The position numbers were made by a program, and so were the translations under genes. 42,365 nucleotides of DNA from Octopus bimaculoides. Lineage: Eukaryota. Shown here in pieces: positions 5,372-42,124 of this stretch. The stretch spans positions 19,219,081 to 19,261,445 of the forward strand of contig NC_069006.1 in NCBI RefSeq assembly GCF_001194135.2, written 5' to 3'. Below the pieces are notes generated by a model, which saw only the letters and a program-made list of their open reading frames with translations, did not search any database and was not told the origin of the DNA. Every line of letters begins with the position of its first letter. Position 1 is the first letter of the stretch.

Positions 5372-5785
5372 GTGGCACACCGTCGCTTACGACGTCGAGG
5401 GTTCCAGTTGATCCGATCAACGGAACAGCCTGCTCGTGAAATTAACGTGCAAGTGGCTGAGCACTCCACAGACACGTATACCCTTAACATAGTTCTCGGG
5501 GATATTCAGCGTGACACAGGATGACAGGCACAACAGAAACAGGAAGTAAGAGTGAGAGAAATTGTGGTGGAAGAGTACAGCAGGGTTCGCCACCATCCCC
5601 TCCTGGAGCCTCGTGGAGCTTTAGGTGTTTTCGCTCAATAAACACTCACAACGCCTGGTCTGNNNNNNNNNNCCTGGAGCCTCGTGGAGCTTTAGGTGTT
5701 TTCGCTCAATAAACACTCACAACGCCTGGTCTGGGAATCGAAACCGCGAGTCTGCTGCCCTAACCACTGGGCCATTGCGGCTCCA
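5372..5785 (-). mobile_element. SINE family A (tRNA-Arg-like head, AAC tail)
   Basis: Reverse complement of the 40880 copy. Contains a 10-N gap with duplicated flanks. Confidence 0.85.
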
Positions 5786-5885
5786 CTTATATATATATAT
5801 ATATATATATATACATACATACACATATACACATAATGTAATATATATATAAATGTATATATAAAGTAATGCATATATATATATA

Positions 5886-7920
5886 TGAAAAAAGTGAAAA
5901 AGTGGTAGCATTTGCATGATCTTTTGGGATGAGTCGGACAACTGTATCGATGATTGAACATAATAAGGACAAGATTTTATCACATATCAAATCTGAAGCC
6001 CCAGGGATGAAGAACACTGTCATCAATAAGAAAAGAGGCAAAATCTTTGAGAAAATGGAAAGTCTTCTTTCTCTTTGGATTGTTAGGTTGAATCGGCAGC
6101 GTGGTACTATTAGTCAAGGATTCATCCAAGAGAAAGCGTTGTCTTTGAGGGCCTGAAGAAAAATATCCAGATGAGAAAGGTGTAGAGTTCAAGGCAAGTC
6201 AAGGATGGTTCATGAGATTTAAGGAGCGAAGAAGTTATCACTCCATTAAGAAGCAAGATGAAAGCGCATCAGCTGATGAACAAGCAGCAATGGAATTTCC
6301 TAATGCATTAAAGAAAATCATTGAAGAAAACAGGTTTCTTCCCGAACAGATTTTTAACGTAGACGAAACTGGATTGTATTGGAAAAAATTGACAGACCGT
6401 TTATTCATTTCTAAGGAGGAGAAAACTGTTCCAGGCTACAAGGACCCAGAAGAACGTGTTACCATTACATTGGGAGGTAATTGTGCAGGAGATTTTAAGT
6501 TAAAACCATTGCTTGTGTATCATGAACACAATCCCCGTGCCCTGAAGAACATACCCAAGGCATCTGTCCCTGTTATATGGATAGCTAATTCAAAAGCATG
6601 GGTTACTGTTATTATTTTTGAAGATTGGTTCTTCAATCATTTTGAAGTACTGTAAGGAGAAGGGGATTCCTTTTAAGGTTTTACTTATCTTAGATGATGC
6701 TCTTGACCACCTGCAAAACATTGTAGGCTTTGACCCCAATGTTACCGTCGTATACCTCACCCTGAACGCTATGTCTCTTCTGCAGCCAGTGGATCAGGGA
6801 ATAAATGCTATCTTCAAGCATCACTATATGAAGTGTACACTGTGCCAAGCAATAGCTGCAACTGATCTTAATGAGTCCGTCACACTTCGAGACTTTTGGA
6901 AGATTTACGATATCTACAAGGCTGCACAGAACATAACAGCAGCATAGAATGATGTACAGAGCACAGCTATGAATGGTGTATGGAAGAAACTGTGTCCGCA
7001 GTTCACGAATGATGTTAAGGGGTTTGATAATGTTGCCATCAACAAAACGTTGGTGACTGCGACAAAAAAACTGGAAATGCATTTGGAGGAGGAGGATTTC
7101 ACAGGTTTATTTGAAAAAGACAAGCAGCCCCTTGATGAACGAAGATTTGATAGAGCTTCATGGGAAGCAAAATAAAGAAGAAGAGGAAGTCGAACCTGAG
7201 CCATGTCACTTTAACATTAAGAAAATGCAGTAAGCATTTGCATTTATTGAAAAAGGTCTTTTTATGTTCGAGGATATGGATCCAAATGCTCAACGCTTTT
7301 CCAAGATTATGGGGGCTTGTCACGAAGCTTTTGCTTTTTATAATGTAATCCTTGAGGAAAAGAAGAAGACAGTTCAAGGAACTCTCAACCGGTTTTTTTA
7401 TGCATATTGAACAAGAACAGCCCGAGACAGCTATTGATGTTGATGATCCACAGCCACCTACATCTGCGATGTAAACCACCAAATTGTATGTACGTATTGG
7501 TAAATTTAAAATAATTTAGTTCTTTTTACTATTGCAAAATAATAATAATTACTGAATTTGTTTTTTAAGCTTAAAAAAGACTTTTATTTTACAATGTCTT
7601 CTTGCAAACAGAATTCATAAGTAAAGCATCCTCGATGTACTGTAAACATTGCCAAATTGTATTCATAAATTTAGATTACTTTTTTTTTTACTATATTGTA
7701 TTAAAAAATATAAATTATTTGTTGGTAAGTTTAAAATAGGTTTCTATTAACCACATTTTATTGAAAATGCATTTATAAATAAAGTACAGAACTGGGAATG
7801 GTTATTATCAGTTTAGCCTAGAGACAAGTAAATTCAGCCTGGCCTAGCCTAGAGACAAGTTAATTTAACTTAAGTTGTGTCTCTTGGAACCAATTAATGA
7901 TGTAGGGTGAGGTATCCCTG
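5886..7920 (+). mobile_element. Tigger/pogo DNA transposon, decayed (CENP-B HTH plus DDE_1 transposase pseudogene), 5' end lost
   Basis: Overlapping ORFs 5929-6156, 6212-6655, 6618-6947, 6969-7175 and 7160-7348 give MESLLSLWI, KASQGWFMRFK, IFNVDETGLYW, LLILDDALDH and LLQPVDQGI, broken by frameshifts and stops. Right TIR ...GTGAGGTATCCCTG ends at 7920, followed by TA. Confidence 0.92.
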
Positions 7921-10976: not shown

Positions 10977-11061
10977 GGCTGGTTTATGGGGTTACATGGG
11001 GTTTCATGTCCGTAAAATGCTTACCTTTACAGCATTTCTTCAGACCCTAAACCTGTTGGCC
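10977..11061 (-). ncRNA. Type I hammerhead ribozyme motif with complete core
   Basis: Minus strand: GGC-CAACA-GGUUUA-GGGU CUGAAGA A AUG-CUGUAAA-GGUAAGCAU-UUUACGG-A-CAU GAAA C-CCCAU-G UA / ACCC-CA-UAAACC-A-GCC. Stems I and II pair extensively. Cleavage triplet is GUA. Confidence 0.75.
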
Positions 11062-19310: not shown

Positions 19311-19757
19311 ATGGCTTTGGACAACTCTGGTTCATCTAGGAAAGGGTCTCCAATAGATCGTGATCAGTCCGAAGGAAAACCTTCTTTTAAATATAGTTTC
19401 GCTTATGAGAGGGCAACTCTGTATGAATACAAGTTCGAACGACAGGCGGAGCCCGATGAAGTTAATCCATGTCTCAGGTGTAACAAAACCGTGTCACGTC
19501 CCGATGAAACGGTTAGCATTGGACCTGATGTACAGTTTCATAAACAATGTTTTCGATGTCGAATCTGCGGCATGCCTCTCACCCAACAGACATTCTATCG
19601 CAACGACCGCATCAACGGCAATATGGACAAAGAAGTTTACTGTAAGACTCATGTTGGTAAAACCCCTGGAGAGATAGAAGGAGCCACTATAAAACAAACG
19701 ACGGCACCTGTTCGTGGGGGCAGCAAAGATTCACCAAATTCCAAATATATCATTCAA
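19311..19757 (+). CDS. Hil: First coding exon of a Hillarin/LTD-1-like LIM (plus probable transglutaminase-like) protein
   Basis: ATG at 19311 with an in-frame TGA at 19299-19301. 149 open codons end at a phase-0 GTAAGT donor (19758). LIM signature C-x2-C...H-x2-C-x2-C-x2-C...C-x2-H (CLRCNKTV...FHKQCFRCRICG...DKEVYCKTH). The insertion before DKEVYC resembles Hillarin (recalled as NNQHKQDDKEVYCSSHVPK) rather than LASP or CRP. Family assignment is from memory, not a search. Confidence 0.75.
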
Positions 19758-20449
19758 GTAAGTTTTCGTATTACTATTTAGTTTTCTTTTAAAACAGACA
19801 CCCTTTTCTTGACACTTTTAGGCCGGAAATTACACACATTAATCAGCATATTTACTGAAGTAAATCCGAATATTTGATGGTTTCACTACAAAAACCAAAA
19901 CGACCATCAGTCCAGTCTTAAAATATACCTTGTTGATTGGGATGTTTAACATTTCGTTTAAACCAAATTAAATTTTTCAACCAATTTTTTTATAGTAAAA
20001 GCAGTTTTTCAAAAAATCCAAACACACATAGTTTATTCGCGTCGGTGATAGTTTGGATCAGCCAAAACAATTAATAAAATAAGATAGGTTTATATCGTGA
20101 GTAGAGGTGTGCTGTGAGGTATCGGTCGGTCCGTAGCAGCACCCTTTGCTAAAATTAACCCTTAGCTTTATGTTAAATACCTACTTAGTCATTCCACCCC
20201 TTCCTACAATCACCTGCCGGATAGATGTATCTACTTGACACTCCTCAACATTCTTTGAACTCGGACCTTTCTTAAACTATCATGTCAAACCAGGTCAGTC
20301 ACGGTGTATCTCCTGTTCTCATTTTTCTCAGTCGCGGTTTCGATTGTTGGTGGAAATTAAGACTATTTAACTTTATGCTATTAACAAATACCATCGGGAA
20401 AGGCCCAGTCACCGCATCCAATTAACACTCCCCAACTTCTTAACAGTTT

Positions 20450-36921: not shown

Positions 36922-37664
36922 TTTAAATCTGTTTATCCATGCTTGTATGAGTTGGTGGCAGGGGTTATTTCGCCGAGTCTCACGCCTCTTCTTGCAGTCT
37001 TTTGTCATTTGTTTTTATGAGAGTTAGTCGCATGAGATCCACTTTTACTTCTCTTTCCCATGGCCAACTTGATCTTCATCTTCCACAGGTTTCTTCTACT
37101 TAGTTTCCTAACACTTCCTGTCATCCTTCCCATATAGCACATGCCCTTACCAGCTCAGCCTTCTCTCTTGCACACTACATCTGATTTCTTTAATCCTCAA
37201 TTTTTCTTTTGGCTCATTTGTGCTCTGTAGTTGAGGCGCAATGGCCCAGTGGTTAGGGCAGCGGACTTGCGGTCATAGAATTGCGGTTTCGATTCCCAGA
37301 CCGGGCGTTGTGAGTGTTTATTGAGCGAAAACACCTAAAGCTCCACGAGGCTCCGGCAGGGGATGATGGTGGCGAACCCTGCTGTACTCTTTCACCACAA
37401 CTTTCTCTCACTCTTACTTCCTGTTTCTGTTGTGCCTGTAATTCAAAGGGTCAACCTTGTCACACTGTGTCACGCTGAATATCCCCGAGAACTACGTTAA
37501 GGGTACACATGTTCCGTTGATCGGATCGACTGGAACCCTCGATATCATAAGGGATGGAGTGCCAACAACAACAACAAAAGCTCTGTAGTTCATGTACATT
37601 AACATTACACATCCAAATAGCGCATATTCTCATTTCATTCCAGTCTTTTTTGTATTCTCTGTGT
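36922..37664 (-). mobile_element. RTE-clade LINE 3' fragment interrupted by a SINE
   Basis: Minus strand reads CSVQERRLSW*GHVL, then a decayed GRGRPRKTW-like region and an RTE-like 3' end. The sequence rejoins across the SINE at TSD GCTCTGTAGTT. Confidence 0.7.
37233..37579 (+). mobile_element. SINE family A with an internal deletion and an 11-bp TSD
   Basis: TSD GCTCTGTAGTT at 37222-37232 and 37580-37590. Lacks the roughly 48-nt segment containing GGAGTGCTCAGCCAC. Confidence 0.9.
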
Positions 37665-40879: not shown

Positions 40880-41263
40880 GTGGAGGCACAATGGTCCAGT
40901 GGTTAGGGCAGTGGACTTGCGGTCATAGGATCGTGGTTTTGATTCCCAGACCGGGTGTTGTGAGTGTTTATTGAGCGAAAACACCTAAAGCTCCACGAGG
41001 CTCCGGCAGAGGATGGTGGCGAACCCTGCTGTACTCTTGCACCACAACTTTCCCTCACTCTTTCTTCCTGTTTCTGTTGTGCCTGTAATTCAAAGGGTCA
41101 GCCTTGTCACACTCTGTGTCACGCTTAATCTCCCCGAGAACTACGTTAAGGGTACATGCATCTGTGGAGTGCTCAGCTACTTGCACGTTAATTTCACAAG
41201 CAGGCTGTTCCGTTGATCAGATTAACTGGAACCCTCGACGTCATAAGCGACAGAGTGCCAACA
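40880..41263 (+). mobile_element. SINE family A, full length, 11-bp TSD
   Basis: TSD ATTGTGAGAAT at 40869-40879 and 41264-41274. Confidence 0.9.
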
Positions 41264-41354
41264 ATTGTGAGAATATGGTTGCGTATATTTTTTATCTTTT
41301 TTCTACCTATTAGAGTAACTTCCCTTTTATTCAATGGTTTTTTTCATAGCATCT

Positions 41355-41432
41355 GTTGCCATTAATAGCTGATGATAATGTATCATAGCCCTTCACACCG
41401 ACATTTGAAACTCCGAGTACTATAATGACAAT
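41355..41432 (+). ncRNA. Type I hammerhead ribozyme motif
   Basis: GUUG-C-CAUU-A-AUAG CUGAUGA U AAUGU-(19 nt)-ACAUU U GAAA CU-CCG-AG UA / CUAU-AAUG-A-CAAU. About 12 bp of stem I and a GUA triplet. The first stem II position is U.U. Confidence 0.65.
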
Positions 41433-41640
41433 CTTTTACCATTTGTTCTAAATTATAACATATATATGTGTGTGTGTGTATGTGTGTGTGTCTGTGTGTT
41501 ATAATTTATATATATTTTATTATTAAAGCTGCGAAAACATCACCAAACACTGTTACTCAGAGTTTCATGTTCCCATGTTTCAAGTAACATGAAGCTCTGA
41601 GTAACAGTTTTTTGTGATGTTTTTGCGGTATTTGAGTACT

Positions 41641-41708
41641 ATTTTGTTCCACCTTGTTTCACATTTATGTGCTTACTCCGGTAGGGGACAAACACAGACA
41701 CACAAATA

Positions 41709-41779
<71 letters not shown>

Positions 41780-41938
41780 CTGCCTTCTTTCAGTTTCCAT
41801 CTACCAAATCCACTCAAGGCTTTGGTCGGCCTGAGGCTATAGTAGAAGACACTTGCCAAAGGTGCCACTCAGTGGGACTGAACCCGGAGCCATGTGGTTG
41901 ATAAGCAAGCTACTTACCACACAGCCATGCCTGTGCCT
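41641..41938 (-). mobile_element. SINE family B, head and part of body, with expanded (CA)n
   Basis: CTTCTTTCAGTTTCCATCTACCAAATCCACTC...CTTACCACACAGCCATGCC. Confidence 0.85.
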
Positions 41939-42124
41939 ATATATATATATATATATATATATACATTTATGTATATAATATATATATATCTATACATAAT
42001 ATATATATATTTATGTATATGTGTATGTATATATATATATATATGTATATAATATATATATGTATATATATAAGTCTAACCCATGCTAGCATGGAAGGCA
42101 GATGTTAAACGATGATGATGATAT

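What the first reader, a model, noticed from the sequence alone, without database searches (positions are those of the whole stretch)
41355..41432. Sense-strand hammerhead motif inside the presumed Hillarin-like intron
Seen: CUGAUGA (41369-41375), GAAA (41407-41410), a 3-bp stem III (A-U, C-G, U-A, loop CCG), GUA ending at 41419, about 12 bp of stem I, and a 5-bp stem II preceded by a U.U pair. It lies on the same strand as the LIM exon, 21.6 kb downstream, and I found no second exon in between. Established: intronic hammerheads exist in vertebrate genes such as RECK. Inference: if active, it would cut this pre-mRNA co-transcriptionally and could affect splicing or output. The U.U pair may have attenuated it.
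Basis: partly seen in the sequence, partly recalled or inferred. Interest (0 to 1): 0.75.

Follow-up and report, generated by a model that had tools for sequence, protein, structure and literature searches.

The report
Solitary retroelement-type hammerhead ribozyme motif
The 78-base stretch does carry a complete hammerhead (self-cleaving RNA) motif, and its two odd features match the variant carried by mobile elements of marine invertebrates, so it is most likely an ordinary mobile-element leftover and not a ribozyme that regulates the gene.

Summary
A descriptor built on those elements finds this site only in the window. It finds none in 300 shuffles, and the chance expectation is about 1e-3 per window.

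A metagenome scan changed the verdict. I searched for the motif's own core plus helix III (CUGAUGA...GAAACUCCGAGUA). It returned 47 loci, and 32 hold well-formed type I hammerheads with covarying helices I and II. In 29 of the 32, the "defective" U.U pair at the base of helix II is also present. U.U is therefore a trait of this class, not damage.

Some of these relatives form 197-205-nt tandem pairs or head-to-head inverted pairs. Others lie 120-170 nt downstream of a retroelement-like ORF. In the window, a 100-nt hairpin 110 nt downstream is built from two inverted copies that resemble hammerhead 3' halves.

The motif is therefore most likely a solitary hammerhead of the Penelope-like/retrozyme class. 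Its helix II is weak (AU-rich, 19-nt loop, predicted pairing probability 0), so strong monomeric cleavage is unlikely. An intronic position is plausible, because a GTAAGT donor follows the LIM exon, but it is unproven. No evidence supports a regulatory role.

It is a new member of a known kind, of modest interest.

The parts
41355..41368 (+). Helix I, 5' strand (GUUGCCAUUAAUAG); A41364 is bulged and C41359 is mismatched
   Evidence: Pairs listed. Distal pairs have predicted probability 0.5-0.73 and proximal pairs 0.08-0.21.
41369..41375 (+). Conserved core box CUGAUGA (positions 3-9)
   Evidence: It is one of 5 such heptamers in the window, counting both strands.
41376..41406 (+). Helix II: U41376.U41406 (positions 10.1/11.1), then 5 bp AAUGU/ACAUU (41377-81 with 41401-05) closing a 19-nt loop (41382-41400)
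   Evidence: all five pairs are standard, but their predicted pairing probability is 0.00. The competing hairpin AUGAUA-aug-UAUCAU sequesters part of the core. U.U is shared with the natural relatives.
41407..41410 (+). Conserved core box GAAA (G12 A13 A14 A15.1)
41410..41418 (+). Helix III, ACU-CCG-AGU (3 bp, 3-nt loop), nearly palindromic
   Evidence: The same GAAACUCCGAGUA string occurs in 32 well-formed natural hammerhead loci.
41419..41420 (+). Predicted cleavage site: after A41419 (H17 of the GUA triplet), before C41420
   Evidence: Position follows from hammerhead numbering. Cleavage was not tested.
41420..41432 (+). Helix I, 3' strand (CUAUAAUGACAAU)
41529..41628 (.). Near-perfect 100-nt hairpin. 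Each arm reads AACAUGAA[A/G]CUCUGAGUAACAG, which resembles helix II 3' strand + GAAA + helix III + UA + helix I 3' strand of a hammerhead. There is no CUGAUGA box. Probably an inverted pair of 5'-truncated hammerhead units.
   Evidence: MFE -60.4 kcal/mol, z = -12.8. The arms are the 2nd and 4th best hits of model R1 in the whole window: 41554-41589(-) at 13.2 bits and 41576-41603(+) at 12.4 bits. Local alignment to the natural consensus is 24/30 and 18/20, reached by 0 of 500 shuffles. Natural relatives L021 and L047 form head-to-head inverted pairs.
19311..19763 (+). Upstream context: first coding exon with a LIM domain (ATG 19311, exon end 19757) and its GTAAGT splice donor (19758-19763)

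Best explanation
The sequence is a genuine but solitary type I hammerhead motif. It belongs to the class carried by Penelope-like retroelements and their non-autonomous derivatives (non-LTR retrozymes), in the variant that has U.U at positions 10.1/11.1 and the short helix III ACU-CCG-AGU.

It was probably left by an old retroelement insertion. A neighbouring inverted pair of truncated hammerhead-like units may come from the same or a second insertion. It lies in repeat- and microsatellite-rich DNA, about 21.6 kb downstream of a LIM-domain first exon, on the same strand.

If transcribed with the gene, the RNA could form helices I, II and III around the CUGAUGA/GAAA core. It would then cleave after A41419 by 2'-O transesterification.

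Its helix II is AU-rich, closes a 19-nt loop and competes with a stronger local hairpin. Its helix III is of the short type that in relatives works mainly in dimers. As a lone copy it is therefore expected to cleave weakly or not at all.

Shown: the motif, its rarity by chance, its match to a natural covarying family, and the neighbouring relic.

Inferred: the retroelement origin, the intronic position, and low activity.
For: 1. Complete core and type I topology. It is the only descriptor hit in the window, with 0 hits in 300 shuffles and an expectation of about 1e-3 per window.
2. The scan CTGATGA-N{10,40}-GAAACTCCGAGTA returned 47 loci. Of these, 32 are well-formed hammerheads. 31 of the 32 have U at 10.1, and 29 have U.U, which the pattern did not require.
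3. These relatives covary in helices I and II: 8 pairs have changes on both sides, reached by 0 of 500 shuffles.
4. Context of the relatives: tandem pairs 197-205 nt apart; inverted head-to-head pairs; and positions 120-170 nt downstream of an ORF with YRDD and GIY..YIG-like motifs that has 1352 homologs on animal-sized contigs.
5. The next-best hits of model R1 in the 42-kb window are the two arms of a hairpin 110-210 nt downstream (E = 0.25 and 0.43). My estimate for this proximity arising by chance is 0.003-0.006.
6. R1 scores the candidate at 30.7 bits. Twelve contigs that carry the 20-nt pattern by chance score 14-23 bits. Untrained true hammerheads score 34.0 and 22.5 bits.
7. Literature: U.U at the base of helix II occurs in axolotl HHR_Amex2, with 22% cleavage per hour as a monomer and much more as a dimer (PMC7229834). 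Metazoan type I hammerheads have short palindromic helices III (PMC4209133). In Xenopus, 42-44% of retrozymes overlap introns, and solo monomers exist (bioRxiv 10.64898/2026.07.22.740005).
Against: - The window holds no second copy of 41265-41460.
- No RT/GIY-YIG remnant or Pfam domain lies within 38.5-42.4 kb. No homolog of the relatives' ORF family occurs anywhere in the window.
- The match to the natural family rests on 13 nt of helix III plus two U residues. Helix II, loop II (19 nt against 4) and helix I are unlike any relative.
- The R1 score is partly circular, because 20 model positions were fixed by my own search pattern.
- I did not determine which organisms the relatives come from, so the class is not shown to exist in the source genome.
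- No Rfam hammerhead family matches even at E <= 10. This is weak evidence, because Rfam also misses all the natural relatives at gathering score, and a canonical one reaches only 14.7 bits against a cut-off of 34.
- The ORF next to the relatives gave no Pfam or PDB match. 'Penelope-like' is therefore a reading of motifs only.
Confidence: 0.7

Rival explanations
1. Chance assembly. An AT-rich region with a local inverted repeat happens to contain CUGAUGA and GAAA in the right register, and the resemblance to real hammerheads is coincidental.
For: - The expectation of about 1e-3 per window implies tens of such motifs in a genome of a few Gb, and a scan selects for them.
- The region is single-copy in the window.
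- Folding is no better than shuffles: z = -0.56, with 53 of 200 shuffles as stable.
- The hammerhead fold is -2.5 kcal/mol against an MFE of -9.7, and helix II has pairing probability 0.00.
- No Rfam hammerhead matches.
Against: - Helix III plus H17 is identical to that of 32 natural hammerhead loci, and the unforced U.U is shared with 29 of them. I estimate this joint coincidence at well under 1e-2, even allowing for many natural classes.
- A second hammerhead-like relic lies within about 200 nt.
- Natural relatives also fail Rfam and also have hammerhead folds above their MFE, so those negatives do not discriminate.
Confidence: 0.12
2. One reading: a host-retained, attenuated intronic ribozyme that cuts the pre-mRNA of the LIM-domain gene co-transcriptionally and modulates splicing or output. 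This would be analogous to the conserved amniote intronic hammerheads.
For: - It is on the sense strand, downstream of an exon with a canonical donor.
- The catalytic core is complete.
- U.U hammerheads can cleave (PMC7229834).
- No exon-like conserved block lies within 10 kb downstream of the LIM exon in the nearest relative either, consistent with a long first intron.
Against: - No evidence of transcription, conservation or cleavage could be obtained.
- Helix II is predicted not to form. By contrast, it is the most stable element in most natural relatives, with probability 0.7-0.99.
- The short helix III class works poorly as monomers.
- The surroundings are repeats and microsatellites, not a conserved block.
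- Retrozyme-type hammerheads commonly lie in introns without a known role.
Confidence: 0.07
3. An active retrozyme unit. The complete hammerhead and the + strand hammerhead-like box in the hairpin (GUA ending at 41603, 184 nt downstream) delimit a small RNA that is excised and circularised.
For: The 184-nt spacing resembles the 197-205-nt natural dimers and falls in the 170-400-nt range reported for metazoan retrozymes (PMC7229834). The interval includes a strongly self-paired segment.
Against: - The second site has GAAG instead of GAAA and no CUGAUGA box, so it cannot cleave.
- The interval contains a (TG)n microsatellite.
- There is no tandem repeat of the unit.
Confidence: 0.03
4. An intronic box C/D snoRNA. 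UGAUGA would serve as box C, inside a terminal stem formed by what is here called helix I.
For: Rfam lists weak matches to SNORD12, snR76 and snoRNA2 at 11.5-13.5 bits, E = 3-7. The size of about 75 nt, the sense orientation in a presumed intron and the terminal stem all fit the type.
Against: - Scores are far below the gathering thresholds of 43-108 bits.
- No CUGA box D precedes the 3' strand of the stem; the sequence there is UUUGAAACUCCGAGUA.
- No D'/C' boxes were identified.
Confidence: 0.01

Closest known systems
Type I hammerheads of Penelope-like elements and non-LTR retrozymes, U.U variant. Represented here by the natural family in metagenome loci L002-L048, and in the literature by axolotl HHR_Amex2.
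   Same: - CUGAUGA and GAAA boxes and type I topology.
- U.U at 10.1/11.1.
- Identical helix III and cleavage triplet (GAAACUCCGAGUA).
- Low-GC surroundings.
- A neighbouring inverted hammerhead-like pair, as in L021 and L047.
(PMC7229834)
   Different: - Helix II is AU-rich with a 19-nt loop. Relatives have 3-6 bp, mostly with a G-C/C-G core, and a tetraloop.
- Helix I is 12 pairs with a bulge and a mismatch, not 6 bp followed by loop 1.
- There is no tandem partner and no adjacent retroelement ORF.
- Activity is untested.
   Same: An isolated type I motif in the sense strand of a presumed intron. These too are thought to derive from retroelement hammerheads (my own knowledge; PMC4209133 notes the similarity between Schistosoma and human motifs).
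   Different: - Those are defined by deep orthologous conservation and demonstrated cleavage. Neither is available here.
- No Rfam HH9/HH10 match even at E <= 10.
- G10.1-C11.1 there, U.U here.
Dimer-dependent satellite/SINE hammerheads (newt satellite 2, Schistosoma Sm-alpha, cave-cricket pDo500) and minimal hammerheads of Penelope-like elements
   Same: A short helix III that is nearly palindromic. Two copies of ACUCCGAGU could pair at 8 of 9 positions (read directly from the sequence), which in these families supports dimeric action (PMC4209133).
   Different: Those occur in tandem arrays or in both terminal repeats of an element. Here there is one complete copy, and the nearest related boxes lack the 5' half of the core.
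Box C/D snoRNA
   Same: A UGAUGA box inside a terminal stem, length of about 75 nt, and a presumed intronic sense location.
   Different: No box D (CUGA), and scores of 11-13 bits against thresholds of 43 or more. It is not a member.

Membership tests
Hammerhead ribozyme, type I | Core box C3-U4-G5-A6-N7-G8-A9 (CUGANGA) | tested here: met
   CUGAUGA at 41369-41375.
Hammerhead ribozyme, type I | Core G12-A13-A14, an A15.1-U16.1 pair, and H17 (not G) at the cleavage site | tested here: met
   GAAA at 41407-41410; A41410-U41418; A41419.
Hammerhead ribozyme, type I | Three helices abutting the core, with helix I open and helices II and III closed by loops | tested here: met
   Descriptor hit with helix I >= 4 contiguous pairs (12 in all), helix II 5 bp and helix III 3 bp.
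Hammerhead ribozyme, type I | A standard pair at 10.1-11.1, usually G-C | tested here: not met
   U41376.U41406. However, 29 of the 32 natural loci with the same helix III also have U.U, as does axolotl HHR_Amex2. This therefore defines a subclass and does not exclude membership.
Hammerhead ribozyme, type I | The hammerhead fold is thermodynamically accessible, with a stable helix II | tested here: not met
   Helix II pairing probability is 0.00, and the hammerhead fold is -2.5 against an MFE of -9.7 kcal/mol. In most natural relatives helix II has probability 0.7-0.99, although their whole fold also lies 2-8 kcal/mol above the MFE.
Hammerhead ribozyme, type I | Match to the Rfam hammerhead models (RF00163, RF02275, RF02277) at gathering score | tested here: inconclusive
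   No match even at E <= 10. The same models miss every natural relative in 8 loci, and a canonical one scores 14.7 bits against a cut-off of 34.
Hammerhead ribozyme, type I | Tertiary contacts between loop 1 and loop 2 | not testable with these tools
   A bulged A41364 in helix I and a 19-nt loop II are present. No recognisable conserved contact nucleotides could be scored.
Hammerhead ribozyme, type I | Site-specific self-cleavage | not testable with these tools
   This needs an in-vitro transcription and cleavage assay, or RNA end mapping.
Non-LTR retrozyme | Tandem repeats of 150-450 bp, each carrying a type I hammerhead (PMC7229834) | tested here: not met
   No tandem repeat of the unit. 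There is one complete hammerhead. The box 184 nt downstream lacks CUGAUGA and has GAAG. At most this is a decayed or solo unit.
Hammerhead of a Penelope-like element terminal repeat | Location in the terminal repeat of an element that encodes RT and a GIY-YIG endonuclease | tested here: not met
   No Pfam domain within 38.5-42.4 kb on either strand. No homolog of the relatives' ORF family anywhere in the window.
Conserved intronic hammerhead (HH9/HH10 type) | Orthologous conservation across species, and location within an intron | not testable with these tools
   The nearest available relative shares only the LIM exon (69% nt identity) and no non-coding sequence. No gene model or RNA data were available.
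Box C/D snoRNA | Box C (RUGAUGA) and box D (CUGA) brought together by a terminal stem | tested here: not met
   A box C-like UGAUGA is present, but there is no CUGA near the 3' strand of the stem. Rfam scores are 11.5-13.5 bits against thresholds of 43 or more.

The most novel reading that the evidence does not exclude
A retroelement-derived hammerhead has been retained in the first intron of a LIM-domain gene of a cephalopod. It would act as a deliberately slow ribozyme: the weak helix II and the U.U pair would couple cleavage to transcription speed or to a trans-acting factor, and so tune how much full-length pre-mRNA survives. This would be an invertebrate counterpart of the amniote intronic hammerheads.
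Probability: 0.05. Interest if true: 0.65.

Novelty: new member of a known kind. Interest (0 to 1): 0.3.

Why it matters
If the reading is right, the site is one more dispersed copy of a hammerhead class already known to ride on Penelope-like elements and retrozymes in many animals. That is unremarkable in itself.

Three points give it modest value:
I found no paper describing hammerheads in cephalopods. One literature search on hammerhead and octopus returned only a paper on Penelope-like elements.
- The U.U pair is a conserved trait of a widespread subclass, so motif searches should not treat it as a defect.
- The Rfam hammerhead models miss this whole subclass. Genome annotations therefore probably under-count it.

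A real effect on the host gene would be interesting, but nothing here supports one.

Tried and rejected
- I first leaned towards chance or artefact. The grounds were the Rfam negatives, folding no better than shuffles and the U.U pair. I dropped this view once controls showed that bona fide relatives also fail Rfam, also fold above their MFE and also carry U.U.
- The first metagenome pattern was too strict (AGCTGATGA...TTGAAACTCCGAGTAC) and found nothing.
- Orthology could not be tested. The best homolog of the LIM exon is only 63% identical. Its contig (L001) shares nothing with the window outside the exon, and flanks are limited to 10 kb.
- A Pfam call on six-frame DNA references failed because of stop codons. 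I redid it with concatenated open segments for 38.5-42.4 kb only.
- I did not scan the + strand from 19.8 to 38.5 kb for further exons.
- Naming the ORF next to the natural relatives failed: Pfam and a profile search of PDB gave nothing. 'Penelope-like' rests on my reading of YRDD and GIY..YIG-type motifs.
- Searching papers and a supplement for the sequence strings returned only unrelated PCR primers.
- The C/D snoRNA reading is rejected because there is no box D.
- The third R1 hit, at 10985-11051(-) with CUGAAGA...GAAAC, is rejected. Helix II does not abut the core and helix III has 2 bp.
- The R1 score of 30.7 bits is not used as independent proof, because the model inherits 20 positions from my search pattern.

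Full report
**Observation**

- CUGAUGA at 41369-41375 and GAAA at 41407-41410.
- A 3-bp helix III (A41410-U41418, C-G, U-A) with loop CCG.
- GUA ending at 41419.
- A 12-pair helix I (41355-41368 with 41420-41432), with one bulged A, one C.A mismatch and one G.U.
- A 5-bp helix II (AAUGU/ACAUU) preceded by U41376.U41406, closing a 19-nt loop.

The upstream exon is also real. ORF 19311-19781 (+) has a LIM domain (Pfam E = 1.8e-9). Its homology to the best relative ends exactly at a GTAAGT donor at 19758.

**Is it more than chance?**

- an exact CUGAUGA box;
- helix II of at least 4 bp, with or without a pair at 10.1/11.1;
- GAAA;
- helix III of at least 3 bp with a loop of 12 nt or less;
- H17;
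- helix I of at least 4 contiguous pairs.

It finds this site and no other on either strand, and nothing in 300 dinucleotide shuffles. A first-order Markov simulation of 1.5 million core contexts gives 4-6e-4 expected hits per window.

In the real sequence, 12 of 84,390 positions satisfy everything except the heptamer. Multiplied by the heptamer frequency, this gives about 1e-3 per window.

The motif is thus improbable in one window. Tens of such motifs would still be expected by chance in a genome of a few Gb, so chance could not be dismissed on this figure alone.

**First impression, later revised**

Several results initially pointed to an artefact:
- Rfam finds no hammerhead family at gathering score in the window. 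It finds none at E <= 10 in 601 nt or 111 nt around the site.
- The 78-mer folds no better than shuffles (z = -0.56).
- The hammerhead secondary structure is -2.5 kcal/mol against an MFE of -9.7, and helix II has pairing probability 0.00. A local hairpin (AUGAUA-aug-UAUCAU) competes for part of the core.
- The stretch 41265-41460 is single-copy in the window. It lies between a SINE-like repeat (40880-41264) and microsatellites.

**The turning point**

Orthologous DNA was unobtainable. The best LIM-exon homolog is 63% identical, and its contig shares only the exon with the window. I therefore scanned the metagenome collection for the motif's own core and helix III.

A strict pattern found nothing. 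The pattern CTGATGA-N{10,40}-GAAACTCCGAGTA found 47 loci. Their content:
- 28 loci belong to one family: ...GUUGC CUGAUGA U UGCUUC AUUA GAAGCA U GAAACUCCGAGUA GCGAU...
- L010, L017 and L031 are different sequences with the same layout.
- L021 is a canonical G10.1-C11.1 form.
- About 14 loci are chance matches without helices.

In 31 of the 32 well-formed loci, position 10.1 is U. In 29 both 10.1 and 11.1 are U, although the pattern did not ask for this.

Further copies in the same loci, not selected by the pattern, keep the ACU...AGU stem with loops CAG, UGG or CGG.

An alignment of 14 distinct members shows compensatory change in helices I and II: 8 pairs have changes on both sides, a level reached by 0 of 500 shuffles.

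The two features that made the candidate look odd are the U.U pair and a 3-bp helix III with a 3-nt loop. Together they are the signature of a natural, covarying hammerhead subclass.

The literature agrees:
- About 60,000 axolotl HHR_Amex2 motifs have a U.U mismatch at the base of helix II. They cleave 22% per hour as monomers and much better as dimers (PMC7229834).
- Metazoan type I hammerheads typically have a short, palindromic helix III (PMC4209133).

**What the relatives are**

- In L025, L038 and L010, two hammerheads lie 197-205 nt apart, like dimeric retrozymes.
- In L021 and L047, two copies lie head to head and form long hairpins.
- In L010, L031 and L041, the hammerhead lies 120-170 nt downstream of the end of an ORF. 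Its family has 1352 homologs at E <= 1e-10 on contigs of animal-genome size, one of them named from the sea cucumber Apostichopus japonicus.
- The ORF alignment shows a YRDD motif and a C-terminal IVY...YIG...R...H...E pattern. I read these as an RT and a GIY-YIG nuclease, the architecture of Penelope-like elements. Pfam and PDB searches did not confirm this, so it remains an inference.
- Published work places canonical hammerheads in the terminal repeats of Penelope-like elements. It also notes inverted 5'-truncated copies and a bias for insertion into microsatellites (PMC8557442). Retrozymes are derived from those repeats (bioRxiv 10.64898/2026.07.22.740005).

**Controls that re-weight the early negatives**

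- Rfam at gathering score detects none of the natural hammerheads in eight loci.
- The perfectly canonical L021 copy reaches only 14.7 bits on RF00163, against a cut-off of 34.
- Natural members also have hammerhead folds 2-8 kcal/mol above their MFE, and helix III pairing probabilities near zero.

Only one negative still discriminates. Helix II is the most stable element in most natural members (probability 0.7-0.99), but it is predicted not to form in the candidate.

**Model search of the window**

A covariance model of the natural family (R1) hits 41361-41427 (+) over its full length, at 30.7 bits and E = 3.5e-6.

This score is partly circular, because 20 positions were fixed by my pattern. 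For calibration:
- twelve contigs that carry the pattern by chance score 14-23 bits;
- two true hammerheads not used in training score 34.0 (truncated) and 22.5 bits;
- trained members score 52-80 bits.

The secondary hits are more informative. The 2nd and 4th best hits in the whole window are the two arms of a 100-nt hairpin at 41529-41628 (MFE -60.4 kcal/mol, z = -12.8). They are 41554-41589 (-) at 13.2 bits and 41576-41603 (+) at 12.4 bits, and both cover model positions 17-46.

Each arm reads AACAUGAA[A/G]CUCUGAGUAACAG. This matches 17 of 20 positions of the L021 3' half. It aligns at 24/30 and 18/20 to the main family, a level reached by 0 of 500 shuffles.

Neither hit is significant alone (E = 0.25 and 0.43). 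Lying within about 200 nt of the top hit in a 42-kb window gives a joint chance of roughly 0.003-0.006, by my estimate.

The hairpin thus looks like an inverted pair of 5'-truncated hammerhead units that lack the CUGAUGA box. This mirrors the inverted arrangements of L021 and L047.

**Conclusion on identity**

Three lines agree:
- rarity by chance;
- an exact match to the helix III and U.U signature of a natural covarying class;
- a second hammerhead-like relic next door.

I put about 0.7 on a genuine, retroelement-derived type I hammerhead and about 0.12 on pure chance.

It is not demonstrably part of a retrozyme or of a Penelope-like element. There is no tandem unit. No coding remnant lies within 3 kb. 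No homolog of the relatives' ORF occurs anywhere in the window. It is best described as a solitary or decayed copy.

**Mechanism and function**

If the region is transcribed with the LIM-domain gene, the RNA could adopt the three-helix junction. It would cleave after A41419 by the usual hammerhead transesterification, leaving a 2',3'-cyclic phosphate and a 5'-OH (established chemistry of the family).

Three features argue for weak activity as a lone copy:
- helix III is of the short class that works mainly through dimers;
- helix II has one G-C pair in five, closes a 19-nt loop and loses to a competing hairpin that forms first during transcription;
- no partner copy with a complete core is nearby.

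An intronic position is plausible. There is a canonical donor, and no conserved block lies within 10 kb downstream in the related contig. I could not verify it, and I did not scan 19.8-38.5 kb for further exons.

In Xenopus, 42-44% of retrozymes overlap introns, so an intronic location needs no special explanation.

**Comparison, novelty and score**

The closest known things are the U.U-variant type I hammerheads of Penelope-like elements and retrozymes.

The finding is a new member of a known kind. Interest is modest (0.3), for three reasons:
- it may extend this hammerhead class to the source lineage;
- it shows that the U.U pair is a class trait and not damage;
- it exposes a blind spot in the Rfam hammerhead models.

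Noticed in passing
window 41529-41628: A near-perfect 100-nt hairpin (MFE -60.4 kcal/mol, z = -12.8). It draws weak matches to many miRNA-precursor models. Its arms carry boxes that resemble hammerhead 3' halves (AACAUGAA[A/G]CUCUGAGUAACAG). It is single-copy in the window. It could instead be a small foldback element or a hairpin-RNA source.
   Followed up: partly
metagenome loci L002-L048 (for example L011 2497-2550, L025 1885-2143, L021 923-1037): A natural type I hammerhead subclass with U.U at 10.1/11.1 and helix III ACU-NNN-AGU. It occurs as 197-205-nt dimers and as head-to-head inverted pairs. Rfam release 15 detects none of them at gathering score, and a canonical member scores 14.7 bits against 34 on RF00163.
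   Followed up: partly
L010 395-1345(-), L041 210-1166(+), L031 466-1203(+): An ORF family ending 120-170 nt upstream of the hammerhead, with YRDD and GIY..YIG-like motifs. It has 1352 homologs at E <= 1e-10 on animal-sized contigs, one named from Apostichopus japonicus. There is no Pfam or PDB match in my scans. It is probably a clade of Penelope-like elements, but this is unconfirmed.
   Followed up: partly
window 40880-41264, 37230-37568, 31292-31838, 5373-5786(-), 25990-26175: A SINE-like interspersed repeat family, with 80-92% identity between copies. One copy ends 90 nt upstream of the hammerhead motif. The motif is not part of the repeat.
   Followed up: partly
window 5920-6944 (+): A frameshifted relic of a pogo/Tigger-type DNA transposase. 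Pfam DDE_1 matches at E = 3.7e-15 and 7.9e-11 in two frames, and HTH_Tnp_Tc5 at E = 4.6e-4.
   Followed up: yes
window 19311-19763 (+): The LIM-domain first exon has an ATG at 19311 and a perfect GTAAGT donor at 19758. The closest database relative is only 63-64% identical in protein. The source species is therefore absent from the protein collection, and the 'Hillarin-like' label is unverified.
   Followed up: partly
window 41358-41441 (+): Weak Rfam similarity to box C/D snoRNAs (SNORD12, snR76, snoRNA2; 11.5-13.5 bits, E = 3-7), caused by UGAUGA inside a terminal stem. There is no box D.
   Followed up: yes
window 10985-11051 (-): A weak hammerhead-like hit of model R1 (12.8 bits, E = 0.33): GGGU CUGAAGA ... 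GAAAC CCCAUGUA ACCC. Helix II does not abut the core and helix III has 2 bp. It is probably chance.
   Followed up: yes
whole window: The window contains 2056 N bases in several runs (assembly gaps) and very dense microsatellites. Near the motif these are (TG)n at 41467-41499, (AC)n at 41688-41778 and (TA)n at 41938-42072. GC content is 25-41%.
   Followed up: no
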